From positions 310,001 through 374,000 of the IMG/VR virus record IMGVR_UViG_3300034073_003340: a DNA stretch of 64,000 nucleotides; one strand, given 5' to 3'. The notes under the pieces were generated by a model. It saw only the letters and a list, made by a program, of their open reading frames with translations, was not told the DNA's origin and did not search any database. The translations under genes and the position numbers were made by a program. Shown piece by piece: positions 570-14,679 of this stretch (the first letter of the stretch is position 1; each line of letters starts with the position of its first letter).

Positions 570-570
570 G

Positions 571-3981: not shown

Positions 3982-4068
3982 TTAGATAATCATGAACAGA
4001 TGGTTGAGGATGATTGAGATCAGATATCCCAGCATCGCTTCAACGATCACGCGAATAATACACGCCAT
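3982..4068 (-). CDS. 28-aa hydrophobic peptide
   Basis: AAGGAGG SD, MACIIRVIVEAMLGYLISIILNHLFMII*. Confidence 0.6.
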   Translation of the reverse strand: MACIIRVIVEAMLGYLISIILNHLFMII

Positions 4069-4115
4069 CTTAGCACCTCCTTGAGGTTGCTACATCCGTT
4101 AAAACCTAACAAGAA

Positions 4116-4148
4116 TCAACGGATGTAAATTGTTTTAACATACATCAT
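4116..4148 (-). CDS. 10-aa leader peptide (uORF)
   Basis: AAGGAG SD, MMYVKTIYIR*; the ORF end forms one arm of a 10-bp hairpin. Confidence 0.4.
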   Translation of the reverse strand: MMYVKTIYIR

Positions 4149-4319
4149 TGTTTTCTCCTTTTTTAGGCTTCGTGATGATCTAGAGGGTAAATTACCCTCT
4201 AAGGCACAACCACGAGTCGTGCTTAGCCTTCGCTATTAATGAGTTGTTAGCCCCAACATAGCTACGATGTTACCATCGATTTCTTATCATACACAACTAA
4301 CTTTGTTGTGTCTATATTC

Positions 4320-4401
4320 TGGTGCTGACGGTGGGACTCGAACCCACGATGTGGTATGAGGCCTTACGAAAGCCTTGGAATCGCCGCTATCCGACATCAG
4401 C
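4320..4401 (-). tRNA. tRNA-Thr(CGT)
   Basis: AGGCT-TTCGTAA-GGCCT arm, extended variable loop, CCA. Confidence 0.8.
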
Positions 4402-4405
4402 AGAT

Positions 4406-4474
4406 TAGGACCCAATATTCATAGCGTCCCCGCTTTAGATGGGAGTGACCCAACCTTGCCCGCTTGGGGCCTTA
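4406..4474 (-). ncRNA. unassigned small structured RNA candidate
   Basis: AGGCCCCAA/TTGGGTCCT closing stem; motifs shared with 3732-3885. Confidence 0.35.
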
Positions 4475-4477
4475 CCT

Positions 4478-4553
4478 TGGTGCCGGCACGAGGGATCGAA
4501 CCCCGGGCCTCAAGATTACAAATCTAGCGCTCTACCAACTGAGCTATACCGGC
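4478..4553 (-). tRNA. tRNA-Thr(TGT)
   Basis: Canonical, TT-TGT-AA, CCA. Confidence 0.92.
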
Positions 4554-4685
4554 ATGTGAGTGGTCCAATGTCTGTTGCCAGCACAGTCCCTTAGGGACTT
4601 CATTGGACCACTGATTTGTGTTTAACAAAAGTGGCCACCTTTGTCAAACTAAAACATTAGCCAGTACATCCGTGGTCTAATGTTT

Positions 4686-4756
4686 TGGAGCCCCAACTAG
4701 GATTCGAACCTAGCCTCCAGCGTTCGAAGCGCCGGGTCCCATCCATGGGCTGGGGC
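4686..4756 (-). tRNA. tRNA-Arg(TCG), short D-arm
   Basis: CGGCG-CTTCGAA-CGCTG arm, CCA, 71 nt. Confidence 0.82.
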
Positions 4757-4757
4757 A

Positions 4758-5054
4758 TTACGCCGGACAGCGATCAAAAACCAACTTGAACGCCATCGCA
4801 TGTCGTTTTTCCATGAACCAGATTTCCATCTGGTCACCTATACCTTCTTCTATTGGGGTATCAACCCAATAGTCGCCGCGTGGGCCAACCATTCTATTGA
4901 GCCATTCTTCAGTTTCTGGTTTCATCCAACGATGCCTAGTCAAGTATTGCTTGAGAGTCATTGTTGGATGATTTTTAAAAGGTTCATAGAATCGATCTGT
5001 TTCAGCTTCGGATAGTTCAAAAACGTATCCGCCTTCATCTTCATAAAGATTCAT
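4758..5054 (-). CDS. small protein, DAxLFKLxW family
   Basis: AGGAGG SD; C-terminal WFMEKRHAMAFKLVF. Confidence 0.75.
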   Translation of the reverse strand: MNLYEDEGGYVFELSEAETDRFYEPFKNHPTMTLKQYLTRHRWMKPETEEWLNRMVGPRGDYWVDTPIEEGIGDQMEIWFMEKRHAMAFKLVFDRCPA

Positions 5055-5105
5055 AAGTCACCTCCTACACCCAGATTATAACCAGGTGTAAGAGATGTCA
5101 ACACC

Positions 5106-5375
5106 TTACTTTTCAGAAAGTGGCTGAGTAGTGGCATATCGCAGCAAAGCGGTAATAATACCAACTACTGTCAGGATAACACCGCTATGCTCACCCATAA
5201 GGGCCTGCATCGAAGGCAAATAAATTTGAAGGGCGCCAAAAATAGTCAGTGCCGTTGAAAACCAAATCGTCTTAGACTTGGCCGCTTTGATTAGCCATGT
5301 CTTAGCGTTAATCCCCATTGCCTGAAGCATATCAAGATATGGGATAACATTTGGTTCTTTGCTTGGTTCAGTCAT
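5106..5375 (-). CDS. two-TM membrane protein, possibly holin-like
   Basis: Two hydrophobic segments, AAGGAG SD, TAAATA upstream. Confidence 0.5.
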   Translation of the reverse strand: MTEPSKEPNVIPYLDMLQAMGINAKTWLIKAAKSKTIWFSTALTIFGALQIYLPSMQALMGEHSGVILTVVGIITALLRYATTQPLSEK

Positions 5376-5418
5376 AGTCGATCTCCTTGTCAGAGTGTCG
5401 ACTATTTACCGCAATGGT

Positions 5419-5491
5419 ATATGGGCAAGTTGGTGGCCAGGGGCTTGGTTCAAAGTTTGAGTTTGATAACCCTGAGCCGTCCGGCCCATAT
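5419..5491 (-). ncRNA. Y-RNA-like element G (no tRNA module)
   Basis: ATATGGGC-CGG...GGGTTATC / CTTGCCCATAT. Confidence 0.7.
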
Positions 5492-5493
5492 TT

Positions 5494-5570
5494 TGGTTGC
5501 GGAGGACGGATTCGAACCGCCGACCTTTAGGTTATGAGCCTAACGAGCTACCAGGCTGCTCCACCCCGCG
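5494..5570 (-). tRNA. tRNA-fMet(CAT)
   Basis: C1:A72 mismatch, CT-CAT-AA, CCA. Confidence 0.92.
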
Positions 5571-5614
5571 TCAATACGATTAGCAAGAACTGTTTCTTGT
5601 GTCAATAATTTTTG

Positions 5615-5803
5615 TGGAGACGACGGGATTCGAACCCGCACGAAAAGCTGACCCAAGCATTACCAAGGGCTGGTGTGTAGGTTCAAAGACTCGTCGCGAG
5701 CCTATAAAAAATATCCCACACCATCTTACGCAACCTTTCAGGTTTTACCCTGAATCGCGGTCTTGTCTTTTGCGATTGCCTGTCCCTCTAGGCGGACGTC
5801 CCC
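5615..5803 (-). ncRNA. tmRNA-like or tRNA-Ala-like RNA with a ~115-nt internal domain
   Basis: Acceptor GGGGACG/CGTCTCC with G3:U70 and A73; T-arm GCGGG-TTCGAAT-CCCGT; no anticodon arm. Confidence 0.55.
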
Positions 5804-5829
5804 ATGTAGTGAATTTTTAGTCTACCAGG

Positions 5830-5902
5830 TACAGGGTGGGAGAATCGAACTCCCTTCTTCCGATTTTCAGCCGGCCGCATTGACCACAGTTGCTTACCCT
5901 GC
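5830..5902 (-). tRNA. tRNA-Phe(GAA)
   Basis: CT-GAA-AA loop; CCA not encoded. Confidence 0.85.
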
Positions 5903-5922
5903 ATGAGGGAGTAGACTCGCGC

Positions 5923-6291
5923 CTACTCCCCTTCGAACTTTGCCTTTAAGGCTTCGTAGAGCTTTCGCTCTTCGTCGTCCTTTTTCAGCTTCTTTGCGAG
6001 GGCGGTTGCTCGTCTCTTTTCAGCGGCAATCGCAGCTTTTGCCTTTTTGGCTTTCAGCTTTTCAATTCGCGTTTCATATTCATCATCCGTCTCCAGACGA
6101 TTACATGACAGACGAATTGTTACCTCACAATCATCATAATACCAGTTGGTTTCGACGTAGAGTTCTAAACCCTCGCCATACTGGGCTATGAGATCCGCCA
6201 GTTTGTAGGTTTCATGCGTGTTGAGGATTTCAACAGTATGTGATACATTCCGACGGGCAAGTTCTTTTTCGTTCAAATCAACCATATTCAC
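5923..6291 (-). CDS. hypothetical protein
   Basis: AGGAGG SD, basic coiled-coil C-terminus. Confidence 0.7.
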   Translation of the reverse strand: MNMVDLNEKELARRNVSHTVEILNTHETYKLADLIAQYGEGLELYVETNWYYDDCEVTIRLSCNRLETDDEYETRIEKLKAKKAKAAIAAEKRRATALAKKLKKDDEERKLYEALKAKFEGE

Positions 6292-6334
6292 CTCCTATTC
6301 CAACACAAAAGGATAGAGGTTTCCAAGGTATCAT

Positions 6335-6410
6335 TGGAGGCCCCAGTGGGAATCGAACCCACATAGATCCGCTTTGCAGGCGGTCACAATTCCCATTCTG
6401 TCATGGGGCC
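6335..6410 (-). tRNA. tRNA-Cys(GCA)
   Basis: CT-GCA-AA, U73, CCA. Confidence 0.88.
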
Positions 6411-6431
6411 ATGTTGCTGTTCAAAACAGCT

Positions 6432-6505
6432 TGGAGCGGGTGAAGGGAATCGAACCCTCGTCTTCAGCTTGGAAGGCTGTAATAATACCATTATACGACA
6501 CCCGC
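6432..6505 (-). tRNA. tRNA-Gly(TCC)
   Basis: CT-TCC-AA, U73, CCA. Confidence 0.92.
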
Positions 6506-6508
6506 GTG

Positions 6509-6670
6509 TCAGGTCTTCTTTGAGATGCCAAAACACCTGAGAAGCTTTGCCAAAAAGGGATGGCGCTCACTGAAGGTCAGCGGTCGAAACCAACAGTAAT
6601 CGTGAGCAATACCCTCACGAGTATCACAGCACCATTCTCCGTTTTCATCATAGTGATGATCTAGGTTCAT
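6509..6670 (-). CDS. small hypothetical protein
   Basis: Start MNLDHHYDENGEWCC after an AGAGG SD, lying between two tRNAs. Confidence 0.45.
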   Translation of the reverse strand: MNLDHHYDENGEWCCDTREGIAHDYCWFRPLTFSERHPFLAKLLRCFGISKKT

Positions 6671-6685
6671 CAAAGCCTCTTTGGT

Positions 6686-6763
6686 TGGAGCGGGTAACGG
6701 GAATCGAACCCGTCTCTTCACCATGGCAAGGTGACATAATCCAGACCAATATACTATACCCGC
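6686..6763 (-). tRNA. tRNA-Gly(GCC)
   Basis: TT-GCC-AT, U73, CCA. Confidence 0.9.
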
Positions 6764-6769
6764 GTGTTC

Positions 6770-6990
6770 AATCTTGAAGATCCGTAGCCGCGATCTTGTT
6801 CTATGCTACAATCTACCTACCTGAATATCACTATTCAAGTGCCTCGCCATTATGCGATGAGACCTTATTGGTCTCCGGCTGCGCCAACCCGACCATATAG
6901 CTGAAGGATTGCCATGGTCTGTTTGGCTTGCTGGCTTAATCACGGTGGTCTCTTCCCTTGTGCTGGTCTATTCGCCCAACTCCCACTCGT
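6770..6990 (-). ncRNA. rnpB: RNase P RNA, 3' piece
   Basis: P15 GCCAA/TTGGC with L15 GGU, P16 GACCAT/ATGGTC, P18 with GUGA loop, and the 3' strands of P2 (TGTAGC), P4 (TCGCGGCT) and P1 (CAAGATT). Confidence 0.8.
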
Positions 6991-7590
6991 TCACTTCTTA
7001 CGGTTTGTTTTTCTGGCCTTAATCAACTGAGAAGCTTTCTCTTTTCCGTGAATTTCTACTAGGGTTTTACCCTTTAGTTTGGCTCTGATATTATCTCCCC
7101 AACCCTCAGGGACCGTTCTCCCTTTAGACCACCCTTGCTTAGTCCAAGTATCAAGCTCATCCGACTTGATCTTTTTATTACCAAGTTCTGGATGAGTGAT
7201 CCATATAGATCCAAATTGGGTATTGTTAGAACCAACACCGACTTGTTTTAGTTGTCGGGTAGATTGTCTCTTCTTCTGAGCTTGTGGCGTTTGAGCAAAC
7301 TTTCGAGCAAATTCATACCCGCCGTCACCGCCCTTTGTCAAATTATAGGTATCAGTGCGGGCTACAAACTCTTCTGTAACGACCTCTTTCTCTTTCAGAT
7401 ACATTTCTGATCTTGAAGAAAAATTTTCTAGAACCTCCTTTTGAAAGTTCTCGATACCATACTTGGCAATAGCTGACTTGATAAGTTCTCCTGAACCCAT
7501 ATAGCCATCGTCTAAATCAGTAGTTGAATGAACCCCGATATAGATCTTGCCATTAATGAGATTGGTGATCTTGTAGAGTATGTAATTCAT
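6991..7590 (-). CDS. GIY-YIG homing endonuclease (Seg-like)
   Basis: YILYKITNLINGKIYIGVH...YMGSG...KYG.ENF.KEVLE...E...YN motifs; own TAAATA box. Confidence 0.9.
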   Translation of the reverse strand: MNYILYKITNLINGKIYIGVHSTTDLDDGYMGSGELIKSAIAKYGIENFQKEVLENFSSRSEMYLKEKEVVTEEFVARTDTYNLTKGGDGGYEFARKFAQTPQAQKKRQSTRQLKQVGVGSNNTQFGSIWITHPELGNKKIKSDELDTWTKQGWSKGRTVPEGWGDNIRAKLKGKTLVEIHGKEKASQLIKARKTNRKK

Positions 7591-7601
7591 ACTCTATTTA
7601 C

Positions 7602-7658
7602 CTCGTCGCGAACTTCCTCAAAAGCTTTCGCTCCTGCTGTAGCTCGACCTGCAAGATT
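7602..7658 (-). ncRNA. rnpB: RNase P RNA, 5' piece
   Basis: P1 AATCTTG, P2 GCTACA, P3 GGAGC-GAAA-GCTTT and CR-I-like GAGGAAGTTCGCGA, each pairing with the 3' piece. Confidence 0.8.
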
Positions 7659-7731
7659 GGTACGCCCACGAAGACTCGAACTCCGATAAACCGGTAATCG
7701 GCCGGTTGCCTTACCATTAGACGATGGGCGC
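7658..7731 (-). tRNA. tRNA-Ile(GAT), atypical C33
   Basis: ACCGG-CCGATTA-CCGGT arm, T-arm, CCA. Confidence 0.65.
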
Positions 7732-7735
7732 AAGC

Positions 7736-7919
7736 TTGATTCAAAAAGCGTGGCTTGGTTCCCCGTTTCAAGCACCACAAGCGACTCTATACCAATACTC
7801 CGCCGGAGCATTCAGTGCGCAACTCTGACTCTACCAGGTTCAAATCCTGGTCATAATATTCAGCAACCATACCCACGAGACCTTTGATGTCTGCGAAGGT
7901 ATCACGCTTTTTGAATCAA
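7736..7919. ncRNA. 184-nt region closed by a 17-bp inverted repeat
   Basis: TTGATTCAAAAAGCGTG/CACGCTTTTTGAATCAA. Confidence 0.4.
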
Positions 7920-7954
7920 TTGAATATAACAAAGGACATGGCCTTTGTCAACAT

Positions 7955-8028
7955 TGGAGCGGATAGGGAGAATCGAACTCCCCTAACTACGTTGGCAACG
8001 TAACGCATTACCACTATGCTATACCCGC
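7955..8028 (-). tRNA. tRNA-Gly(GCC)
   Basis: TT-GCC-AA, U73, CCA. Confidence 0.9.
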
Positions 8029-8195
8029 ATGGTATTTGCTGACCGGAACCTCTCGCCAACAGCGCAAGCTCACCACACTTCCGTGCCCGGCCATCTTGCC
8101 ATTTTTGCTCGACCGCTAGGTAGTCTGTGCCTCTAAAGGTTTCACATCCTACATCAGCAGATTTGTTCTAACAAATCGTAATCAATTTGTCAATC

Positions 8196-8274
8196 TGGGG
8201 TGACCGGCGGGAATTGAACCCAGCACCTTCGGCTTCACAGGCCGCTATCCACAAACCAGTAGACCACGGTCACC
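8196..8274 (-). tRNA. tRNA-His(GTG)
   Basis: G-1:C73, CT-GTG-AA, CCA. Confidence 0.9.
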
Positions 8275-8281
8275 ATACAGA

Positions 8282-8692
8282 TCAGAGGGCTTTGCCCGTC
8301 CTCGCATCAACAATTCTTACTCCTGGAAAAACTGCTAGGCTACCACTTTCTCCACCTTGGAAATAAGCGTCGTATCCTTTTGCTCGGAGTTCTCTAAAAA
8401 ACCCCGGTATCTTTTCCATTTCACCATAATACTCTTCTATTTCATCCTCTGTGGGATAGTAGATATTATGAACATCCAAATAGCAAGCATAGGTTTCGGC
8501 CAAATTGTCCCCGTAGATTTTCTCACCCCAAGTGGGCGAATCAGAGAACCATAAACCAGCATCTGGTATCTTGAACTTGGTAATATTCTTGGTATTACTA
8601 CCATGATACATGACGCTCTTGACCTTGGAGCCAGAGAACGGATTTGGAACAAACTGCTCCGAATCTTCACCAATGATTTGTTTCCATCGCAT
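8282..8692 (-). CDS. ADP-ribosyltransferase-like late protein
   Basis: MYHGS...F...GLWFSDSP..(IY)G motifs; TAAATA-N4-ATG; N-terminus MRWKQIIGE. Confidence 0.55.
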   Translation of the reverse strand: MRWKQIIGEDSEQFVPNPFSGSKVKSVMYHGSNTKNITKFKIPDAGLWFSDSPTWGEKIYGDNLAETYACYLDVHNIYYPTEDEIEEYYGEMEKIPGFFRELRAKGYDAYFQGGESGSLAVFPGVRIVDARTGKAL

Positions 8693-8705
8693 TGAATATT
8701 TATTC

Positions 8706-8793
8706 TGCTGAGCGCGGAGTCGAACCGCCTACCGTTTATGGCATCGCCCATCACTTCTTATTGATTCGTACTGGCCCGGCCAGCTACTCAGCA
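8706..8793 (-). pseudogene. tRNA-like RNA without a recognisable anticodon arm
   Basis: TGCTGAG/CTCAGCA acceptor and GGCGG-TTCGACT-CCGC T-arm. Confidence 0.5.
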
Positions 8794-8870
8794 TGGCCCT
8801 CTGGACGGGACTCGAACCCGCCTCGACCCGGCGTGACAAGCCAGCGGCGTCACCCGACGCCTCCCAGAGG
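8794..8870 (-). tRNA. tRNA-Asp(GTC)
   Basis: CTGGC-TTGTCAC-GCCGG arm, G73, CCA. Confidence 0.9.
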
Positions 8871-8924
8871 ATATGGTTTTCTGCTCTCAGAATGTCACGC
8901 CTAGTTTCAGCGGCGTTCCCTCGG

Positions 8925-8997
8925 TGGAGACTAGGGGGATCGAACCCCTGACCTACGCAATGCCATCGCGTCGCTCTCCCAGCTGAGCTAAGTCCCC
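8925..8997 (-). tRNA. tRNA-Ala(GGC)
   Basis: G3:U70, AT-GGC-AT loop. Confidence 0.9.
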
Positions 8998-9007
8998 ATG
9001 GGAGGGG

Positions 9008-9632
9008 TCACAAGGACCCCTTGGCTAGGATCAGTCTTTCTAGACCAATTGCCCAGCCAACACCTTCGGCGTATCTACCGCCTCCAGCGATTTGTTTTTG
9101 CGCGCCAAGCTGCTCGCATACGCCTTCGAATCCATCCTCTATATAATAGGATAATCCGCGTTTTACAGCGTCATTGAGCTGCCACTCGACCCCTTGAGAG
9201 TCAATACAGCGTCGCAGTAGCTCAACAACTTCGTCGCGGTCCTCAGGGCCCTGTGAGCCCAGATACTCTACGCCAAATTGTATGAACTCCCGATACCGGC
9301 CTGCTTGTGGGCGCTCGTATCGGTAACAACGACTCACATAGAAGATCTTTAGTGTCTTTTCTGTGTGTCGCCATTTTTCTCGCCAGAGCTCTTGGATGAG
9401 CCCGGTGACTTCGGGAATCAAGCAAACATCTCGACCTCCCTTATCCTGGAAGGCCCACATTTGATTGATTATCTCTGGACCGGCTTTGTCGATGAAAGTC
9501 TGTTGTTCCCATATTGCGGGCAGAATAACCTCGTTGAAACCAGCTTCAGTGAACCAACCCCCTCAAGGAGTTGATTACATTGGTCATTTCACGGGCGTCG
9601 TCGCCCATGAGGACCCTTGTTCCCCTTAGCAT
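9008..9632 (-). CDS. hisS: histidyl-tRNA synthetase catalytic core only, frameshifted at a G5 run (9558-9562)
   Basis: MLRGTRVL, then after the shift GFNEVILP (motif 1), CYRYERPQAGRYREF (motif 2) and GGGRY...AIGLERL (motif 3); no anticodon-binding domain. Confidence 0.75.
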
Positions 9633-9668
9633 AAATCACCTCTTGTTTTCAGCGACCCTAATGGTCGT

Positions 9669-9742
9669 TGGATGCCCCTCTAGGGATCGAACCTAGGTTA
9701 CAACATTCAAAGTGTCGTGTCTTACCATTAGACGAAGGGGCA
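9669..9742 (-). tRNA. tRNA-Gln(TTG)
   Basis: CT-TTG-AA, CCA. Confidence 0.9.
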
Positions 9743-9753
9743 ATGTAGAGACC

Positions 9754-9813
9754 TGAGCAAGTTGATGCGGCGAGGGGTTCATCACCAAAAGATAACCCTC
9801 ATGCTTCGGCTCA
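9754..9813 (-). ncRNA. Y-RNA-like element C (no tRNA module)
   Basis: TGAGC-CGA-AGCATGAGGG-TTATC...CCCTCG...CAACTTGCTCA. Confidence 0.7.
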
Positions 9814-9819
9814 AATCTA

Positions 9820-9895
9820 TGGCTCCGGAGGAGGGACTCGAACCCCCAACATCCTCGTTAACAGCGAGGCGCATCTACCATTGAGCTACTCCGGA
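9820..9895 (-). tRNA. tRNA-Asn(GTT)
   Basis: CT-GTT-AA, G73, CCA. Confidence 0.92.
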
Positions 9896-9899
9896 ATGA

Positions 9900-10015
9900 A
9901 TATGAGCAAGTTTTGTAAAGGACTTTCCCAGTTGCCTGGGGTGATGGATTTGAACCATCTAGTTTTGATTTGAAGTCAAAAGTTTTTCCGATAACCCTTT
10001 ACTATCGGCTCATAT
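9900..10015 (-). ncRNA. Y-RNA-like element D with a TCA anticodon arm, T-arm and loop-closed acceptor
   Basis: ATATGAGC-CGA...GGGTTATC / CTTGCTCATAT; TTTTGA-CTTCAAA-TCAAAA arm. Confidence 0.75.
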
Positions 10016-10088
10016 GGCGCCCTCGGGAGGATTCGAACCTACCTCATCTTCCCTTCGCAGGGGAAGTGCATGATCCACATGCGAGGGC
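10015..10088 (-). tRNA. tRNA-Arg(GCG), short D-arm
   Basis: TTCCC-CTGCGAA-GGGAA arm, CCA. Confidence 0.8.
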
Positions 10089-10093
10089 ATTAG

Positions 10094-10165
10094 TAGTCCC
10101 GTGGTGACTCGAACACCAATCCGCCCTTTATGAGAGGGTGGCACTAACCTTTGTGCTACAGGACC
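10094..10165 (-). tRNA. tRNA with CAT anticodon (Met or Ile2)
   Basis: CT-CAT-AA loop with paired position 1. Confidence 0.8.
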
Positions 10166-10168
10166 ATA

Positions 10169-10244
10169 TGGTGAACCGGGCGGGACTCGAACCCGCGACC
10201 AGCTGATTAAAAGTCAGCTGCTCTACCGACTGAGCTACCGGTCC
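10169..10244 (-). tRNA. tRNA-Lys(TTT)
   Basis: Canonical, CT-TTT-AA, CCA. Confidence 0.95.
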
Positions 10245-10300
10245 ACTCCAGCTCTCTTTAGCTAAAGATTTCCGTTAGTCAAAGATTTTTCTTACACCAA

Positions 10301-10753
10301 CTACTTTAAAATCACCGGTATGTTCATTTTCTTAGCCAGATCTTCAACCTGGTCTCGAAAATATTCATCATCGTCCTGTCCACCTTCGTCTCTTATCCAT
10401 ATCTCCTTGACTGTAGAGGAGTTTATTGGATAAAGAGGTGATGGTTCTATCACCGTTTCATCTTCGGGACGGGTCCCCAAAATGATTCGGACTTCATCCC
10501 AACGATCAACCACTTGCGTTTCAAAACCCTTGGGGGCTTTTAGCACAAATGTCACATTGGCTGAATTCTTTACACCACCAGAGAACCAAAGATTGGGATC
10601 AGTAGTGGTTGAAACAAAATATTCAACATTGCGATCATGGTCGATGTCGTCATAGCTGGTATGGATGCCACCGTCTCTTAATATTGAAAGGGCAGGCCTC
10701 ATATCAGTAGCATGATACAAAACACCGCCAGTCAAGACTTCATATAACCGCAT
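10301..10753 (-). CDS. ART-fold-like late protein
   Basis: LYHAT...SIL..GG...FVSTTTDP...DEVRI; TAAATA-N5-ATG; N-terminus MRLYEVL. Confidence 0.5.
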   Translation of the reverse strand: MRLYEVLTGGVLYHATDMRPALSILRDGGIHTSYDDIDHDRNVEYFVSTTTDPNLWFSGGVKNSANVTFVLKAPKGFETQVVDRWDEVRIILGTRPEDETVIEPSPLYPINSSTVKEIWIRDEGGQDDDEYFRDQVEDLAKKMNIPVILK

Positions 10754-10765
10754 ATCTGTATTTAT

Positions 10766-10841
10766 TGGTGGGAGCCGTGGGGATTGAACCCACCTCGTTC
10801 TGCTTGTAAAACAGATGTCATCACCAGATGGCTAGACTCCC
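10766..10841 (-). tRNA. tRNA-Val(TAC)
   Basis: TT-TAC-AA, CCA. Confidence 0.88.
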
Positions 10842-10842
10842 A

Positions 10843-10917
10843 TGGTAGTCGGTGAGGGTTTCGAACCCCCGACCCTCTCGGTGTAAACGAGATGCTCTAC
10901 CACTGAGCTAACCGACC
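10843..10917 (-). tRNA. tRNA-Val(TAC)
   Basis: TT-TAC-AC, CCA. Confidence 0.92.
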
Positions 10918-10957
10918 ATGTTATCAACATAAACAATCCTATTTGGAATGTCAATAT

Positions 10958-11040
10958 TGGTGGGAAGCAATGGAGTCGAACCATTCCCCGAAAGCGCGGT
11001 TTTACAGACCGCTTGCTAGAACCGCTAGCTTTTACTTCCC
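10958..11040 (-). tRNA. tRNA-Tyr(GTA)
   Basis: GCGGT-CTGTAAA-ACCGC, CCA. Confidence 0.88.
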
Positions 11041-11054
11041 ATATTTGTAATCAG

Positions 11055-11126
11055 TAGCGCGGACGGGAATCGAACCCGCTTACACCTGGGTGAAAACCAA
11101 GCCGCCTGCCATTAGCGTTCCGCGCC
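11055..11126 (-). tRNA. tRNA-Glu(TTC)
   Basis: TT-TTC-AC loop; CCA not encoded. Confidence 0.8.
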
Positions 11127-11137
11127 ATGAAGTATTG

Positions 11138-11209
11138 TGACCCATAGGGGGATCGAACCCCTGTTCTCGCCTTGAAAGGGCGCGCTCTTAACCATTAGAG
11201 GAATGGGCC
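11138..11209 (-). tRNA. tRNA-Glu(TTC)
   Basis: CT-TTC-AA loop; ends CAA. Confidence 0.88.
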
Positions 11210-11240
11210 GTGTGGGCAAATACCCTGCTGACTTACAGCT

Positions 11241-11315
11241 TGGTGGACGATACAGGGATTGAACCTGTGACCTTTCCCATGTCAAGGGAACGCGCTACCG
11301 CTGCGCCAATCGTCC
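11241..11315 (-). tRNA. tRNA-Val(GAC)
   Basis: TTCCC-TTGACAT-GGGAA, CCA. Confidence 0.92.
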
Positions 11316-11318
11316 ATA

Positions 11319-11984
11319 TCAAGCAAACAAGGAATTTTTTGCTTGAATCTTATTACCATTTGAATCAATACCTGGATACCCGTGATTCTGTAAAATCACA
11401 TGGGCCGCTGCCTTGAGACGCAACCTCGGGAAATCTTTGGTATAGAGGATCAAAGAGTAGGTTAGCTTTTCTTCACAACCGCCACCTGATCCAGTATTGA
11501 TTCCGATCCTTTTTAGGTGGTCAGAATGAATTAAATGCTTTCGGTAAACATTTCCTTTGGGGCGAATTATAATCTTGCCCTCCCAACCCGCTTCCGGAAC
11601 GTGGGGTGACTCACTACTCCAACCAGTTTCTTTCTGACCAATAGGAGAAGTGTGGGTCGTTGGACAAAGTGGGTTGAAGTTCAAATTTGAGATTTCAAAT
11701 TCAACATAATCACTAGCGGTTGGATAATAGGGATTTTTAGCTTCCCAACGTGGTCCAAAGTGTATGGCGATCTTCATGTAATTGGCTGTCAGCCACTCCG
11801 CAATTGCGTTAGTGGTATCCAGACAATACAAAGACTTCAAAAACTCATCGAACTCAAGAGCCAACTTGGACTGTTCGCGCTTGAAGCGCAAATCAAAACG
11901 AGTTCGCTTCAAGTGCTCAGCATATTCACTGGAGCACTCAAAAAGCTTACCGGTCCAAGGGCACTTGTTAACAATTACCTTCAT
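11319..11984 (-). CDS. hypothetical protein
   Basis: 221-aa ORF filling the gap between tRNAs. Confidence 0.75.
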   Translation of the reverse strand: MKVIVNKCPWTGKLFECSSEYAEHLKRTRFDLRFKREQSKLALEFDEFLKSLYCLDTTNAIAEWLTANYMKIAIHFGPRWEAKNPYYPTASDYVEFEISNLNFNPLCPTTHTSPIGQKETGWSSESPHVPEAGWEGKIIIRPKGNVYRKHLIHSDHLKRIGINTGSGGGCEEKLTYSLILYTKDFPRLRLKAAAHVILQNHGYPGIDSNGNKIQAKNSLFA

Positions 11985-12020
11985 GCCAACTGAGTAGCAT
12001 AAAAAGACCAGTTGTCAACA

Positions 12021-12107
12021 TGGTTGCAGAGGTGGGATTTGAACCCACGTAGCCTTTCGGCAGCCTCGGTTATGAGCCGAGCGAGATAACCACTCCTCTA
12101 CCCTGCG
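12021..12107 (-). tRNA. initiator-like tRNA(CAT) with a long variable arm
   Basis: C1:A72, CT-CAT-AA, GCC-GAAA-GGC variable stem, CCA. Confidence 0.8.
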
Positions 12108-12109
12108 AG

Positions 12110-12182
12110 TGCAACCAGTTGGAATCGAACCAACGACACGCGCATTTTCAGTGCGCTGCTCTACCTGCTGAGCTATGGTTAC
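12110..12182 (-). tRNA. tRNA-Phe(GAA)
   Basis: GCGCA-CTGAAAA-TGCGC. Confidence 0.9.
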
Positions 12183-12183
12183 A

Positions 12184-12259
12184 TGGACCTAACAGGGGCA
12201 TTTCAGCCCTCACTTTCTGACCAGCGTGGCGGTCAGCCGTGCCTCTTACACTAGTTAGG
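12184..12259 (-). pseudogene. tRNA-like RNA, 8-nt anticodon loop, non-canonical T-loop
   Basis: CCTAAC/GTTAGG acceptor, CTGACC-GCCACGCT-GGTCAG, CCA. Confidence 0.5.
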
Positions 12260-12262
12260 ATT

Positions 12263-12339
12263 TGGTGCCGACACCTGGAATCGAACCAGGAAAATCACCC
12301 TTATGAGAGGTAATAGGAGACCGCCTCCTTCCTACCGGC
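12263..12339 (-). tRNA. tRNA with CAT anticodon (Met or Ile2)
   Basis: CT-CAT-AA, CCA. Confidence 0.78.
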
Positions 12340-12345
12340 AAAGTT

Positions 12346-12420
12346 TGGCACGGGTGGAGGGATTCGAACCCTCTCTGCATGGTTTTGGAGACCAGCCGAC
12401 TACCAGTATCATACACCCAT
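12346..12420 (-). tRNA. tRNA-Trp(CCA)
   Basis: CT-CCA-AA, G73, CCA. Confidence 0.88.
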
Positions 12421-12435
12421 ATGAAAGATTTTTAG

Positions 12436-12506
12436 CAGGGCCAGTAGGAATCGAACCCACAAGAGCTGGTTTGGAGCCAACCATGATACCATTTCATCAT
12501 AACCCT
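12436..12506 (-). tRNA. tRNA-Trp(CCA)
   Basis: CT-CCA-AA, G73. Confidence 0.85.
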
Positions 12507-12529
12507 ATAGGTCAGAAAAGCTGACACAG

Positions 12530-12598
12530 TGGAAGCCTGGGATTTGAACCCACCAAACGGCTTTTATTCACCGTCATGCACCAAAACATCTGGCCCCC
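12530..12598 (-). pseudogene. tRNA-like RNA, Ala-type acceptor, 8-nt loop
   Basis: GGGGGCC/GGCTTCC-A, ACGGT-GAATAAAA-GCCGT, TTCAAAT T-loop. Confidence 0.5.
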
Positions 12599-12626
12599 AT
12601 GGAGGACGGATAGTAATCCGTCTTTG

Positions 12627-12697
12627 CGCAGCATGGGGGAATCGAACCCACCACCTCCAGGATTCCGCCTGGTATGCTAAACCTACAACATAGCCGC
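12627..12697 (-). pseudogene. tRNA-like RNA, 6-nt anticodon loop (Pro-like)
   Basis: CCAGG-CGGAAT-CCTGG, TTCGATT T-loop, imperfect acceptor. Confidence 0.45.
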
Positions 12698-12698
12698 A

Positions 12699-12783
12699 TG
12701 GTGGGTAGGTGCGGAATCGAACCACTCCCCGAAGGATCTGATTTACAGTCAGACTGCCGTATCCAAGACGACTTTACCTACCC
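12699..12783 (-). tRNA. tRNA-Tyr(GTA)
   Basis: TCTGA-CTGTAAA-TCAGA, variable arm, CCA. Confidence 0.88.
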
Positions 12784-12787
12784 ATAG

Positions 12788-12867
12788 AGGACCAGGTGGG
12801 ACTCGAACCCACGATGTATAATAGCCGGTTAAAAGCCGACGCCGATCGCCGCTACGGTGACTGGTCC
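12788..12867 (-). tRNA. tRNA-Lys(TTT)
   Basis: CT-TTT-AA, extended variable loop. Confidence 0.8.
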
Positions 12868-12873
12868 AAAGAT

Positions 12874-12951
12874 TGGTCAGGGTGAGAGGACTCGAACCTC
12901 CACGATGTCCTCCTTCCAAAGGAGACGACTTACCAATTAGTCCACACCCTG
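12874..12951 (-). tRNA. tRNA-Pro(TGG)
   Basis: TT-TGG-AA, C1-G72, CCA. Confidence 0.9.
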
Positions 12952-13087
12952 ATGTGGTCAAGACTTGCTAGATATATTGCTGTCCCGCATGGGACACCTG
13001 CCCGTCGGGGAGTCGAACCCTTCCGGTTGGGGACTTGAACCCCGCTTCACCCTAGCACCTACCCACTCGGTAGCTTTCGCTAAGTCT

Positions 13088-13161
13088 TGGTGCTTCAGCA
13101 AGGAATCGAACCTTGGTCGTGCCATTATCAGTGGCGTGCTCTACCATTGAGCTACAGAAGC
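13088..13161 (-). tRNA. tRNA-Ile(GAT)
   Basis: CT-GAT-AA, CCA. Confidence 0.92.
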
Positions 13162-13166
13162 ATGAT

Positions 13167-13294
13167 CGATGAGCAAGGAGGTGTGCTAGGAGATTGACTA
13201 GGTCCTACCCCGGCCCTCATTGTGGACCGGCCGAGACTCGAACTCGGATCGTTTGTTTCACAGACAAAGATAACCTAACGCTATCGGCTCATCG
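13167..13294 (-). ncRNA. Y-RNA-like element E enclosing a permuted tRNA-His-like module (GTG)
   Basis: CGATGAGC-CGA...GGTTATC / CTTGCTCATCG; TTTGT-CTGTGAA-ACAAA arm, T-arm, CCGGTCC then GGGCCGG. Confidence 0.8.
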
Positions 13295-13295
13295 G

Positions 13296-13378
13296 TGCGG
13301 ATGACTGGACTCGAACCAGCACGCCACTAGGGCACCGCCTTCTGAGGACGGCAAGTCTACCAATTTCATCACATCCGC
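13296..13378 (-). tRNA. tRNA-Leu(CAG)
   Basis: CT-CAG-AA, long variable arm. Confidence 0.9.
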
Positions 13379-13400
13379 ATGTAAAAGGCTTGTGAACCTT

Positions 13401-13477
13401 TGGTGCTCCCCGTGGGACTCGAACCCACACTGAACGGAGTTTGAACCCGCTGACTCTACCAATTGGCCTAGAGGAGC
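13401..13477 (-). tRNA. tRNA-Leu(CAA), short variable arm
   Basis: TT-CAA-AC, CCA. Confidence 0.85.
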
Positions 13478-13496
13478 ATGACACTGGCTAACAGCT

Positions 13497-13581
13497 TGGT
13501 GCGGATAGTGGGACTCGAACCCACACGCCCTAAGGCACAGGCCTCTCATGCCTGCAAGTCTACCAGTTTCATCATATCCGC
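13497..13581 (-). tRNA. tRNA-Leu(GAG)
   Basis: AT-GAG-AG, long variable arm, CCA. Confidence 0.88.
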
Positions 13582-13652
13582 ATAGTCAACAAAGTGTCAA
13601 TATTAACGACCTTTACTCTTACCTCCCGGAACGGTCAAGCGGGCGACTTTGT

Positions 13653-13727
13653 TGGTGCCCCATCCAAGAATCGAACTTGGATCTACGCCTTACCAAGGCG
13701 TTATAATAACCATTATAATAATGGGGC
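13653..13727 (-). tRNA. tRNA-Thr(GGT)
   Basis: ACGCC-TTGGTAA-GGCGT, CCA. Confidence 0.92.
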
Positions 13728-13728
13728 A

Positions 13729-13803
13729 TGGAGCAGGTAGAGGGGATCGAACCCTCTTCTACGGTTTGGAAGACCATCATAATAACCAATATACTATACC
13801 TGC
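13729..13803 (-). tRNA. tRNA-Gly(TCC)
   Basis: CT-TCC-AA, U73, CCA. Confidence 0.9.
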
Positions 13804-13804
13804 A

Positions 13805-13881
13805 TGGTGTCCATGGAGAGATTCGAACTCTCACTGTCTGCATTCTAAGCGCAGTGCCTCTTCCGATTGGGCTACATGGAC
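13805..13881 (-). tRNA. tRNA-Leu(TAG), short variable arm
   Basis: CT-TAG-AA, CCA. Confidence 0.88.
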
Positions 13882-13882
13882 A

Positions 13883-13980
13883 TGGCAGAGAGCAGAGGAC
13901 TTGAACCTCAAGCGCATGTAGGGGTAAATGGCGCTCACATGATTTTCATCAGCCCAGCGACCTCGCTGGTTTTACTCTCT
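13883..13980 (-). tRNA. Ser-like tRNA (TGA uncertain), degenerate anticodon arm
   Basis: G73, CCA, very long variable arm, 7-bp D-stem; anticodon loop does not fit 7 nt. Confidence 0.5.
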
Positions 13981-13981
13981 A

Positions 13982-14058
13982 TGGTAGATGATCAGGGGTT
14001 CGAACCCTGGACCTACGGTTTAAGAGACCGTCGCTACTACCAACTGAGCTAATCATCC
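13982..14058 (-). tRNA. tRNA-Lys(CTT)
   Basis: ACGGT-CTCTTAA-ACCGT, CCA. Confidence 0.92.
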
Positions 14059-14180
14059 ATAAGGGGCGCCACTAGCTTGTTCGTTTCCCTGGCGTGCCAT
14101 GGCGCCCAGCCAACAGCACTAGGGAGAAACCTTGCTTAAGGGTTTCGTAAGCATTGCCCCGTCCGACAATACTTGGAACT

Positions 14181-14254
14181 TGGATGCCCATCGAGGATTC
14201 GAACCTCGGTTGACCGGTTCAGAGCCGGGTCTCTTACCGTTAGAGGAATGGGCA
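14181..14254 (-). tRNA. tRNA-Gln(CTG)
   Basis: CT-CTG-AA, CCA. Confidence 0.9.
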
Positions 14255-14268
14255 ATAAGAGATAAAGT

Positions 14269-14342
14269 TGGTAGCCCCAACGGGGATCGAACCCGTTTCG
14301 CCGCCTTGAGAGGGCAGCAGCTTACCAATAGAAGATGGGGCC
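14269..14342 (-). tRNA. tRNA-Glu(CTC)
   Basis: CT-CTC-AA, CCA. Confidence 0.88.
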
Positions 14343-14343
14343 A

Positions 14344-14431
14344 TGGAGGACCAGGTGGGGTTCGAACCCACAAGGGACTTTCATCCGTCGCATTAAGAGT
14401 GCGGTGAGCCAACCAACTGCTCAACTGGTCC
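14344..14431 (-). tRNA. tRNA-Lys(CTT) with a long variable arm
   Basis: CT-CTT-AA, GGA-TGAAAG-TCC variable stem, CCA. Confidence 0.8.
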
Positions 14432-14436
14432 ATGAT

Positions 14437-14573
14437 CAACGGGCAAGTGGTGAAAAGGATGTTTTTCCCGGCTTTACCAATTTGCCTATCCCCCGTCAAT
14501 GGTCGGGGGAGGAGGACTTGAACCTCCAAACAGGGTCTCCTAATGACGATAACCCTTATCAATCGGCCCGTTG
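14437..14573 (-). ncRNA. Y-RNA-like element F enclosing a permuted tRNA-Leu-like module (TAG)
   Basis: CAACGGGC-CGA...GGGTTATC / CTTGCCCGTTG; TCCCCCG-A-CCA-TTGA-CGGGGGA. Confidence 0.8.
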
Positions 14574-14648: not shown

Positions 14649-14679
14649 ATGATAGTTTACCGACATTTCGGTCAATATC

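What the first reader, a model, noticed from the sequence alone, without database searches (positions are those of the whole stretch)
9008..9632. Catalytic-core-only HisRS with a one-base frameshift
Seen: an SD-preceded frame MLRGTRVL... stops at 9546-9548. Removing one G from the G5 run (9558-9562) fuses it to the downstream frame, giving 207 aa with class II motifs 1-3 but no insertion or anticodon-binding domain. Established: HisRS reads G-1:C73 in the acceptor stem. Inference: a minimal synthetase could charge acceptor-only or anticodon-damaged RNAs. The frameshift may be a sequencing error, decay or slippage.
Basis: partly seen in the sequence, partly recalled or inferred. Interest (0 to 1): 0.6.

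Follow-up and report, generated by a model that had tools for sequence, protein, structure and literature searches.

The report
Histidine-sensing frameshift in a mini HisRS
The one-base break in this phage's miniature histidyl-tRNA synthetase gene is a conserved programmed +1 ribosomal frameshift, built like the release-factor-2 (prfB) site but with a histidine codon where prfB has a stop codon, and the encoded protein contains almost no histidine, so it looks like a backup enzyme made only when charged histidine tRNA runs short.

Summary
On the minus strand, an ORF preceded by a Shine-Dalgarno (SD) sequence (ATG 9632) stops at 9548-9546. The HisRS catalytic core continues in the +1 frame to 9010-9008.

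The break is not an error or decay. In 162 of 177 homologous loci, the same +1 break lies at the same place. These loci come from huge phages, metagenomes and cultured Pseudomonas, Paraburkholderia, Chromobacterium and Myxococcota. All 148 unique sequences carry an SD-like GGAGG/GGGGG, a 3-nt spacer, then CTT or GTT, then CAT or CAC. This is the prfB frameshift architecture with a His codon replacing UGA. The G5 run is the SD-like stimulator, not the slip site.

A subclade has moved the break to another position, again at CTT CAT. There, only a slip of the Leu tRNA with the His codon left unread restores the invariant motif VCLIPE.

The frameshifted proteins are essentially His-free: 0.039% His, and 136 of 148 have none.

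The fold, predicted dimer, active-site residues and acceptor-stem-contact residues are those of HisRS. The insertion and anticodon-binding domains are absent.

Best model: a feedback switch in which a starved His codon triggers synthesis of an emergency mini-HisRS. I found no description of this in the literature. Regulation and enzymatic activity are untested.

The parts
9637..9644 (-). Initiation Shine-Dalgarno sequence AAGAGGTG, 4 nt upstream of the start codon
   Evidence: Read directly from the sequence
9552..9632 (-). Frame-A coding part, 27 codons (MLRGTRVLMGDDAREMTNVINSLRGLV). It encodes the HisRS N-terminal strand and helix, which form much of the predicted dimer interface.
   Evidence: Aligns to T. 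thermophilus HisRS residues 6 onward. Third-codon-position variation follows frame A up to the site. Residues 1-17 and 24 lie in the predicted dimer interface.
9557..9563 (-). Internal Shine-Dalgarno-like stimulator AGGGGGT.
   Evidence: Positions -9 to -4 are CGGAGC, CGGAGG, AGGGGG or CGGGGG in 126 of 148 unique homologues, and T at -3 in 126 of 148. This is the same element and spacing as in prfB (PMC12421855).
9552..9554 (-). P-site slip codon GTT (Val). The tRNA is proposed to re-pair on TTC (9553-9551). This codon is CTT in 118 and GTT in 30 of 148 homologues.
   Evidence: The shift window is bounded by a +1-frame stop abutting TTC in 3 homologues and by a 0-frame stop right after the His codon in 49.
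9549..9551 (-). 0-frame His codon CAC. This is the proposed slow or 'hungry' A-site codon that is left unread in the productive path.
   Evidence: CAT or CAC in 148 of 148 site-1 sequences and in 6 of 6 loci (4 distinct sequences) of the second site. Reading it at the second site would give VCLHPE instead of the invariant VCLIPE.
9546..9548 (-). 0-frame stop TGA. It ends the 28-aa non-shifted product.
   Evidence: A stop follows the His codon directly in 49 of 148 homologues and within 5 codons in 146.
9008..9550 (-). +1-frame coding part: 180 codons (TEAGFNEVILP...LAKGSL) plus the stop codon. It holds motif 1, the His-binding PE.T, motif 2, the HisA and HisB motifs and motif 3. There is no insertion domain and no anticodon-binding domain.
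8196..8274 (-). Neighbouring phage tRNA-His(GUG) with encoded G-1 (8274), C73 and CCA. It is the presumed substrate.
   Evidence: ARAGORN. Acceptor stem parsed. tRNA-His lies within 3 kb of the gene in 7 of 13 other phage loci and in phage Phosso.
8923..8997 (-). tRNA-Ala(GGC) immediately downstream. The gene is embedded in a same-strand array of 50 tRNA genes (484-16031).
9669..9742 (-). tRNA-Gln(UUG) immediately upstream of the gene

Best explanation
The locus encodes a 207-aa, dimeric, catalytic-core-only histidyl-tRNA synthetase. Its synthesis requires a programmed +1 ribosomal frameshift.

Proposed mechanism. Ribosomes start at ATG 9632 and read 27 codons. An internal Shine-Dalgarno-like AGGGGGT pairs with 16S rRNA 3 nt upstream of the P-site codon GTT (CTT in most relatives). 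The A-site then holds a His codon (CAC or CAT).

- If His-tRNAHis arrives promptly, the ribosome stays in frame and terminates at once, releasing a 28-aa peptide.
- If the His codon stays empty, the P-site tRNA slips one base forward onto TTC. Translation continues in the +1 frame through the whole enzyme.

The enzyme contains no (or almost no) histidine, so it can be completed during His-tRNAHis shortage. The product is inferred to charge tRNAHis through acceptor-stem and G-1 recognition, which restores His-tRNAHis and shuts off its own synthesis. The logic is that of prfB and RF2, with a sense codon as the sensor.

What is shown: the conserved break, its motif, coding selection in both frames, the second independent site, the His depletion, the HisRS fold and the conserved residues.

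What is inferred: the slip mechanism (my estimate about 0.8), regulation by His-tRNAHis level (about 0.65) and tRNAHis charging (about 0.55).
For: **The break is conserved.** Of 177 analysable loci from IMG/VR, metagenomes, GTDB genomes, a cultured phage and a plasmid, 162 have the N-terminal ORF in the -1 frame relative to the core. The other 15 are unbroken.

**The motif is conserved.** All 148 unique site-1 sequences have exactly NTT CAY, located 75 nt after the RGTR signature.
- N is C in 118 and G in 30.
- TTCA is invariant.
- SD-like hexamers sit 3 nt upstream.
- The commonest spacer is TAT, as in prfB.
- The prfB consensus is AGGGGG, then 3 nt, then CTT T (PMC12421855).

**Both frames are coding.** Codon-position entropy switches phase exactly at the site, and synonymous positions are frozen there.

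**The unbroken homologues lack the motif.** They have neither the SD-like codons nor CTT CAY.

**A second site exists.** A subclade (L027, L205-L209; one of its proteins is listed in 39 blocks of the contig index) has the break 44 codons further on. The sequence there is GTG TGY CTT CAT CCC TGA. A slip on CTT restores VCLIPE.

**Histidine is depleted.**
- Frameshifted forms: 0.039% His; 136 of 148 have none.
- Second-site clade: none.
- Other window ORFs: 2.14% His; 0 of 27 are His-free.

**The protein looks like HisRS.**
- AF2 model: pLDDT 92.7.
- Best structural matches: E. coli and T. thermophilus HisRS, TM 0.81-0.86.
- His-binding, ATP-binding and acceptor-stem-contact residues (Tt E81, T83, R112, Q117, R120, R122, E130, R259, Y263, Y264, motif-3 R) are invariant in 160 of 160. 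Residue roles are taken from PMC4357726.
- Predicted homodimer: score 0.87 against a best control of 0.00. The mark was reached by 20 of 30 proteins solved as pairs and 1 of 23 solved as single chains. Contact agreement at least 98%, pLDDT 88. The frame-A segment lies in the interface.

**A likely substrate is nearby.** A tRNA-His with G-1:C73 is adjacent.
Against: - There is no expression, proteomic or ribosome-profiling evidence. Only assembled contigs were available, and no RNA run holds the locus.
- The window itself uses GTT. After the slip, its tRNA mismatches at the first codon position, so the slip is less favourable than with CTT.
- CAY could in part be a by-product of other constraints: C is needed for re-pairing, and AY fits an Ile or Thr codon in the new frame.
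- The link between having the frameshift and avoiding His is significant only without phylogenetic correction (Fisher 1.2e-5). Only 3 independent contrasts exist.
- The unbroken homologues are also His-poor (0.55%).
- Extra HisRS does not help if free histidine itself is missing.
- The G-1 pocket glycines (Tt G72/G73) are not conserved in the bacterial clade. Tt E64 (reported essential in TtHisRS; its listed contact is through the main chain) is Gln here. The Arg of GGGRY is Ala in 56 sequences.
- The insertion domain that clamps the acceptor stem is absent.
Confidence: 0.6

Rival explanations
1. The +1 frameshift is real and programmed but constitutive. The His codon serves only as a generally slow, low-abundance-tRNA codon that sets a fixed low yield. 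There is no feedback from His-tRNAHis levels.
For: CAT, the wobble-read codon, is preferred (117 of 148), which fits 'slow by nature'. Part of the CAY constraint could come from the re-pairing C and the Ile or Thr codon in the new frame. No regulatory data exist.
Against: This reading does not explain why the codon is His in 148 of 148 sequences and again at the independently evolved second site. It does not explain why it sits in a HisRS homologue. It does not explain why the product is nearly His-free (0.039% against 2.14%).
Confidence: 0.2
2. The frameshift works as described, but the protein is not a tRNA-charging enzyme. It could be a HisZ-like regulator of ATP phosphoribosyltransferase (as PGAP names it), or a histidine-adenylating enzyme with a non-tRNA acceptor. 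Either could still relieve histidine shortage.
For: PGAP names the bacterial copies 'ATP phosphoribosyltransferase regulatory subunit'. NCBIfam hisZ scores 2.9e-24. The anticodon-binding and insertion domains are absent. Tt E64 is not conserved, and the G72/G73 pocket varies.
Against: hisS scores far better than hisZ (141.6 against 85.7 bits). HisZ structures rank only 22nd in the fold search. Residues that contact the tRNA acceptor end (Tt E114, R115, Q117, R120, R122) and all adenylate-site residues are invariant. No hisG or any other conserved neighbour was found in 80 bacterial loci. In phages the gene sits in tRNA arrays beside tRNA-His.
Confidence: 0.15
3. The break is a sequencing or assembly error in the G5 homopolymer, or this copy is a decaying pseudogene.
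For: A homopolymer lies next to the break, and removing one G restores a sensible protein.
Against: Four runs' contigs, including another sample and a variant strain, show no indel. The same break occurs in 162 of 177 loci, including complete isolate chromosomes, and most lack any homopolymer. Both parts are under purifying selection.
Confidence: 0.01
4. The frames are joined at the RNA level by transcriptional slippage on the G run. Alternatively, they are never joined: a split gene gives a 28-aa peptide plus a core started internally.
For: G5 runs can support polymerase slippage. Gene callers routinely call the core alone.
Against: - The G run is absent in most homologues, for example CGG AGC TAT CTT CAT.
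- In the window, the +1 frame has no ATG, GTG or TTG before Met 35, and upstream it reads M*STP*.
- Three homologues have a +1-frame stop abutting TTC.
- The second-site clade would be split inside the active-site strand VCL/IPE.
- The frame-A segment forms the predicted dimer interface.
Confidence: 0.04

Closest known systems
prfB (release factor 2) programmed +1 frameshift
   Same: Both have an internal SD-like AGGGGG or GGAGG, a 3-nt spacer (often TAT), a CTT P-site slip codon, a slow A-site codon whose decoding depends on the gene's own product, a short 0-frame product and no downstream RNA structure.
   Different: The A-site sensor here is a sense codon (His CAY), not the stop UGA. The slip is onto TTC rather than TTT. 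GTT replaces CTT in a fifth of members, including the window. The regulated product is an aminoacyl-tRNA synthetase homologue. The site has been re-invented at a second position in one subclade.
Yeast Ty1/ABP140 +1 frameshift (CUU AGG C) and Gallant's 'hungry codon' frameshifting
   Same: A Leu tRNA on CUU slips +1 while the A-site waits for a scarce aminoacyl-tRNA (PMC5009743).
   Different: Ty1 senses a constitutively rare tRNA and has no SD element. Hungry-codon shifts in bacteria were known only as starvation errors. The 2016 review states that no examples producing functional trans-frame proteins are known.
Canonical bacterial HisRS (E. coli 1KMM/2EL9, T. thermophilus 1ADJ/4RDX)
   Same: The catalytic-core fold matches (TM 0.81-0.86). 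Motifs 1-3, the HisA and HisB motifs, and the residues that bind His, bind ATP or contact the acceptor end are shared. A homodimer is predicted.
   Different: The protein is about half the size. It has no insertion domain (Tt 172-228) and no anticodon-binding domain (Tt 331-421). The loop before motif 3 is 11 residues shorter. Histidines are purged, including the motif-2 His (Tt H125 becomes Thr).
HisZ and other truncated synthetase paralogues (YadB/GluQRS, PoxA/EpmA; listed in PMC9437257)
   Same: It is a stand-alone synthetase core without an anticodon-binding domain. Bacterial copies are currently annotated as HisZ.
   Different: HisZ keeps the insertion domain, has no adenylation activity (PMC9437257) and works with HisG. 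Here the catalytic residues are invariant and there is no hisG linkage.
Engineered catalytic-domain fragment of E. coli HisRS (Augustine and Francklyn 1997; recalled from memory, not retrieved here)
   Same: It showed that a HisRS lacking the anticodon-binding domain can still adenylate and charge tRNAHis, though less efficiently.
   Different: That fragment is a laboratory construct that keeps the insertion domain. This is a natural, widespread and still smaller form.

Membership tests
Class II histidyl-tRNA synthetase (catalytic core) | Sequence motifs 1, 2 and 3 and the HisRS-specific HisA (RGLxYY) and HisB (GGGRY) motifs | tested here: met
   PF13393 at 1.4e-20 and TIGR00442 at 3e-41. Alignment to 1ADJ. 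Invariance in 160 sequences. The Arg of GGGRY is Ala in 56 bacterial members.
Class II histidyl-tRNA synthetase (catalytic core) | Antiparallel-sheet class II fold and homodimer | tested here: met
   AF2 model pLDDT 92.7. Foldseek top 21 matches are all HisRS, TM up to 0.86. Dimer prediction scores 0.87 against a best control of 0.00. The mark was reached by 20 of 30 solved pairs and 1 of 23 single chains; contact agreement at least 98%, pLDDT 88. This may partly reflect memory of solved HisRS dimers.
Class II histidyl-tRNA synthetase (full enzyme) | C-terminal class IIa anticodon-binding domain | tested here: not met
   The ORF ends 8 residues after motif 3. Nothing aligns to Tt 331-421. The NCBIfam hisS score of 141.6 is below the cut-off of 286.75.
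Class II histidyl-tRNA synthetase (full enzyme) | Insertion domain between motif 2 and HisA | tested here: not met
   Tt residues about 157-226 have no counterpart.
Class II histidyl-tRNA synthetase (full enzyme) | Histidine activation and charging of tRNAHis | not testable with these tools
   Supported only indirectly, by invariant active-site and acceptor-contact residues and by the neighbouring tRNA-His with G-1:C73.
HisZ (ATP phosphoribosyltransferase regulatory subunit) | Best match to HisZ models, and functional or genomic association with hisG | tested here: not met
   TIGR00443 scores 85.7 bits against a cut-off of 271.65, below the hisS score. No conserved neighbour was found in 80 bacterial loci. 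HisZ structures rank 22nd.
prfB-type programmed +1 ribosomal frameshift | Internal SD-like sequence 3 nt upstream of a CTT slip codon, with a +1 shift needed for the full product | tested here: met
   compared with PMC12421855. The window has AGGGGGT, a 2-nt remainder of the spacer, then GTT. CTT occurs in 118 of 148 relatives.
prfB-type programmed +1 ribosomal frameshift | A-site codon is the in-frame stop UGA read by the gene's own product | tested here: not met
   The A-site codon is His (CAY) in 148 of 148. A stop follows it directly in only 49.
prfB-type programmed +1 ribosomal frameshift | Frameshift efficiency falls as the product's activity rises (autoregulation) | not testable with these tools
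   Inferred from the His codon and the His-free product.

The most novel reading that the evidence does not exclude
This is the first natural 'hungry-codon' recoding switch. A sense codon (His) in the ribosomal A-site reports the supply of His-tRNAHis and, through a prfB-like +1 slip, turns on a His-free emergency histidyl-tRNA synthetase. The device is widespread in cultured Pseudomonas, Paraburkholderia, Chromobacterium, Myxococcota and huge phages. It has been invented twice within one gene family and is currently mis-annotated as HisZ or as a short CDS.
Probability: 0.55. Interest if true: 0.9.

Novelty: new variant of a known kind. Interest (0 to 1): 0.86.

Why it matters
Programmed +1 frameshifts that act as sensors are very few; prfB and antizyme are the main cases. 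The standard review states that no case is known in which aminoacyl-tRNA shortage at a 'hungry' codon makes a functional trans-frame protein (PMC5009743). This family would be that case. It is directly testable, because it occurs in easily grown Pseudomonas and Paraburkholderia strains and in an isolated jumbo phage (Sinorhizobium phage Phosso).

It also defines the smallest natural HisRS-like enzyme, about 205 aa. That bears on how little protein is needed to recognise tRNAHis by G-1 and the acceptor stem.

It would show a new way for bacteria and tRNA-rich huge phages to stabilise tRNA charging.

It also exposes a systematic annotation error. Hundreds of genes are called as N-terminally wrong CDSs or as 'ATP phosphoribosyltransferase regulatory subunit'.

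Tried and rejected
- Megablast of the region against INPHARED phages found no match. A protein-mode search was needed to find phage Phosso.
- An Rfam scan of 8900-9800 found only the two flanking tRNAs.
- RNAalifold on 36 diverse sites (-45 to +75) gave no conserved structure: -0.13 kcal/mol and no covariation. A structural stimulator is therefore rejected.
- Gene-neighbourhood clustering of 80 bacterial loci found no conserved partner. Pfam annotation of Pseudomonas neighbours gave GntR, TrmK, DUF1444-like, DUF3144 and MCP, with no shared theme.
- Reads: only Logan contigs were served, and the 'RNA' runs held at most 8% of sampled words, probably tRNA words. There is no evidence on expression or RNA-level editing.
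- The phylogenetically independent test of frameshift against His avoidance was underpowered: 3 supported contrasts, p not significant. The Fisher test ignores relatedness.
- Eight literature searches found nothing on this family or on a His-codon frameshift. The 'tRNA synthetase' cluster in the GeneTack survey is classed there as phase variation and is not identified as HisRS.
- The second tRNA-His call (13222-13298) has no proper acceptor stem and overlaps tRNA-Leu. I did not use it.
- Quadruplet decoding by a special phage tRNA is rejected as unnecessary, because ordinary bacterial chromosomes carry the same site.

Full report
**1. The observation**

The feature lies on the minus strand. 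An ORF preceded by AAGAGGTG starts at ATG 9632, encodes MLRGTRVLMGDDAREMTNVINSLRGLVH and stops at TGA 9548-9546. The +1 frame is open from just after TGA 9565-9563 down to the stop at 9010-9008. It encodes a HisRS-like core.
- Pfam PF13393 scores 1.4e-20.
- NCBIfam hisS scores 3e-41 (141.6 bits, below the full-length cut-off). hisZ scores only 85.7 bits.
- Against T. thermophilus HisRS, the core aligns to residues 34-156 and 227-314. The insertion domain and the C-terminal anticodon-binding domain are therefore absent.
- The short frame-A peptide aligns to the genuine HisRS N-terminus.

The gene sits between tRNA-Gln and tRNA-Ala, inside an array of 50 same-strand tRNA genes. The window is part of a 435,856-bp IMG/VR contig, that is, a huge phage.

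**2. It is not an error or decay**

Contigs assembled from four runs cover the G run without any indel. They include a different sample and a variant strain at k-mer depth 447. Only contigs, not raw reads, were available.

The comparative evidence is stronger. A protein search found more than 1,500 short (146-233 aa) homologues, many on contigs of 250-960 kb. Their called N-termini looked like read-through of the wrong frame.

I fetched DNA for 29 viral, 80 metagenomic and 80 genomic loci, plus a cultured phage and a plasmid. Of 177 analysable loci, 162 have the M[LIV]RGTR ORF in the -1 frame relative to the core. That is the same +1 break. The other 15 are unbroken.

Carriers include complete chromosomes of cultured Pseudomonas, as well as Paraburkholderia, Chromobacterium, Achromobacter, Thalassospira and Myxococcota MAGs.

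Codon-position entropy shows third-position variation in frame A up to the site and in frame B after it. Both parts are therefore translated and under purifying selection.

**3. Anatomy of the site**

In the 78 unique viral and metagenomic frameshifted sequences first analysed, the break lies 75 nt after the RGTR signature in 77; the exception is L027, treated in section 4. All 148 unique site-1 sequences have one in-frame NTT CAY there.

| Element | Counts among 148 unique sequences |
|---|---|
| P-site codon | CTT 118, GTT 30; never ATT or TTT |
| His codon | CAT 117, CAC 31 |
| Positions -9 to -4 | CGGAGC 53, CGGAGG 51, AGGGGG 13, CGGGGG 9 |
| Position -3 | T in 126 |
| Commonest spacer codon | TAT (34) |

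- Synonymous positions that vary freely elsewhere are frozen here.
- The unbroken homologues use CGT, AGA or CGA for the same Arg and have no CTT CAY.
- Three sequences have a +1-frame stop abutting TTC, and 49 have a 0-frame stop right after CAY. The shift must therefore happen while NTT or CAY occupies the P-site.
- No conserved RNA structure surrounds the site.
- The motif GGRGGNNNSTTCAY occurs once in the 64-kb window, at 9562-9549.

The architecture is that of prfB. The prfB consensus is AGGGGG, three nucleotides, then CTT followed by the stop (PMC12421855). The difference is that a His codon stands where prfB has UGA.

**4. A second, independent site fixes the mechanism**

L027 has an intact first junction but breaks 44 codons later. 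Frame A ends ...RQVCLHP*, and the +1 frame continues IPECTALIQ. Relatives from other samples (L205-L209) share this arrangement, down to 78% identity over the core. One of their proteins is listed in 39 blocks of the contig index. All have GTG TGY CTT CAT CCC TGA.

If the Leu tRNA on CTT slips to TTC and the next codon read is ATC, the product is VCLIPE. This motif is invariant in the family. If His were decoded first, the product would be VCLHPE.

So the His codon is the unread A-site codon and the NTT codon is the slip site. This also matches the 3-nt SD spacing.

On a FastTree tree, this clade is nested among unbroken forms, which are themselves nested among frameshifted ones. At least 7 state changes are needed. 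That suggests loss and re-invention of the site. Branch supports there are modest and L027 is a long branch.

For the window, the predicted product is 27 + 180 = 207 aa, with the junction ...SLRG-LV-TEAGF. The spacing between LR and GF (6 residues) equals that of the unbroken homologues.

**5. The protein is almost free of histidine**

| Set | His content | His-free proteins |
|---|---|---|
| All 161 unique full-length products (33,675 aa) | 0.08% | 141 of 161 |
| Frameshifted forms | 0.039% | 136 of 148 |
| Second-site clade | none | all |
| Unbroken forms | 0.55% | 5 of 13 |
| Other window ORFs of 200 aa or more | 2.14% | 0 of 27 |

Even the His of motif 2 (Tt H125) is Thr.

The association of His avoidance with the frameshift gives Fisher p = 1.2e-5. 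However, only 3 phylogenetically independent contrasts exist, so this particular correlation is suggestive only.

A His-free product whose only His codon is the one at the switch is what one expects of a protein that has to be made when His-tRNAHis is scarce.

**6. What the protein is**

- An AlphaFold2 model of an unbroken homologue is confident: pLDDT 92.7, pTM 0.89.
- It matches E. coli and T. thermophilus HisRS best (TM 0.81-0.86). HisZ ranks 22nd.
- Using the T. thermophilus HisRS-tRNAHis structure paper for residue roles (PMC4357726), the following are invariant in 160 of 160: the His-binding residues (E81, T83, E130, Y263/Y264), the adenylate-site residues (R112, F124, R259, motif-3 Arg) and the acceptor-end contacts (Q117, R120, R122). 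E114 is conserved in 157 and R115 in 155.
- That paper also reports that insertion-domain contacts (R197, K209) are largely dispensable.
- Caveats: Tt E64 is Gln here. The G72/G73 pocket for G-1 is GG in the window but AG or KG in the bacterial clade. The Arg of GGGRY is Ala in 56 bacterial members.
- A homodimer is predicted, with score 0.87 against a best control of 0.00. The mark was reached by 20 of 30 proteins solved as pairs and 1 of 23 solved as single chains. Contact agreement is at least 98% and pLDDT is 88. The pass may partly reflect memory of solved HisRS dimers.
- The interface uses residues 1-17 and 24, which are encoded before the frameshift. The joined protein, not the core alone, is therefore the functional unit.

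**7. Genomic context**

In phages the gene lies in tRNA arrays, often next to tRNA-His (7 of 13 other loci; also Phosso).

The window's tRNA-His (8196-8273) has a 7-bp stem, C73, an encoded CCA and a G at -1.

In bacteria the gene stands alone, with no conserved neighbour and no hisG.

Annotators have missed the recoding. Phosso calls a frame-B CDS starting MQSTPSEVVF, and PGAP calls the Paraburkholderia copy 'ATP phosphoribosyltransferase regulatory subunit'.

**8. Interpretation**

The best-supported model is a prfB-like feedback loop.
1. A vacant His codon in the A-site lets the SD-tensioned ribosome slip +1.
2. The slip produces a His-free mini-HisRS.
3. The enzyme recharges tRNAHis.
4. 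The refilled A-site then aborts further synthesis after 28 codons.

The conserved recoding and its motif are shown. The slip mechanism is strongly inferred. Regulation by His-tRNAHis and tRNA charging are inferences.

Rivals are a constitutive frameshift and a non-tRNA (HisZ-like or other) function. Error, decay, transcriptional slippage and a split gene are effectively excluded.

**9. Novelty**

Eight full-text searches found no description of this family or of a His-codon frameshift. The comprehensive 2016 recoding review says that, for hungry-codon frameshifting yielding functional trans-frame proteins, 'no examples are known'.

I rate it a new variant of a known kind: prfB-type autoregulatory +1 frameshifting applied to an aminoacyl-tRNA sensor. 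It comes together with a new minimal HisRS family.

Noticed in passing
window 484-16031 (minus strand): There are 50 tRNA genes in about 16 kb, all on one strand. They cover nearly all amino acids, with several duplicates, and small ORFs are interspersed. This is typical of huge phages.
   Followed up: partly
window 6991-7590 (-): A 199-aa ORF inside the tRNA array has a SegE-type GIY-YIG endonuclease domain (PF19835, 4.9e-6). It is probably a homing endonuclease.
   Followed up: partly
window 8282-8692 (-): A 136-aa ORF lies directly upstream of tRNA-His. It has a sub-threshold match to ART-PolyVal ADP-ribosyltransferase (26.6 bits against a cut-off of 31.2).
   Followed up: no
window 13222-13298 (-): A second tRNA-His(GUG) call overlaps tRNA-Leu(CAG) by 5 nt and lacks a proper acceptor stem. 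It may be degenerate or a false call.
   Followed up: partly
L175:1246-1323 (Pararhizobium sp. BT-229): A tRNA array next to an unbroken copy of the gene contains a tRNA-His with the unusual anticodon ATG beside a normal GTG one. This locus and the Thalassospira locus (L129) look like phage-type tRNA islands in bacterial genomes.
   Followed up: no
L007:2206-2288: ARAGORN reports a tRNA-like gene with a two-base 'anticodon' (gc). It sits between tRNA-Tyr and tRNA-His, just upstream of the mini-HisRS gene of a 415-kb phage.
   Followed up: no
L205:1-285, L207:1-285: Contigs of the second-site clade carry a 390-aa EF-Tu-family gene (GTP_EFTU domains 1-3) about 900 nt upstream of the mini-HisRS. 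This suggests a cluster of translation genes.
   Followed up: no
L191 (Paraburkholderia sprentiae plasmid NZ_CP017563.2) and L190 (Sinorhizobium phage Phosso PV764938.1): Public annotations call only the +1-frame part, from spurious upstream starts. One is named HisZ (WP_051374196.1) and the other 'histidyl-tRNA synthetase' (XYS97181.1). The frameshift is not annotated in either.
   Followed up: yes
bacterial clade, alignment of 160 cores: Pseudomonas- and Burkholderia-type copies differ from phage copies at three conserved spots: DKAGR or DKKGR instead of DKGGR, GGGAY instead of GGGRY, and F-G instead of W-A before motif 3. This may reflect a different tRNAHis 5'-end recognition.
   Followed up: partly
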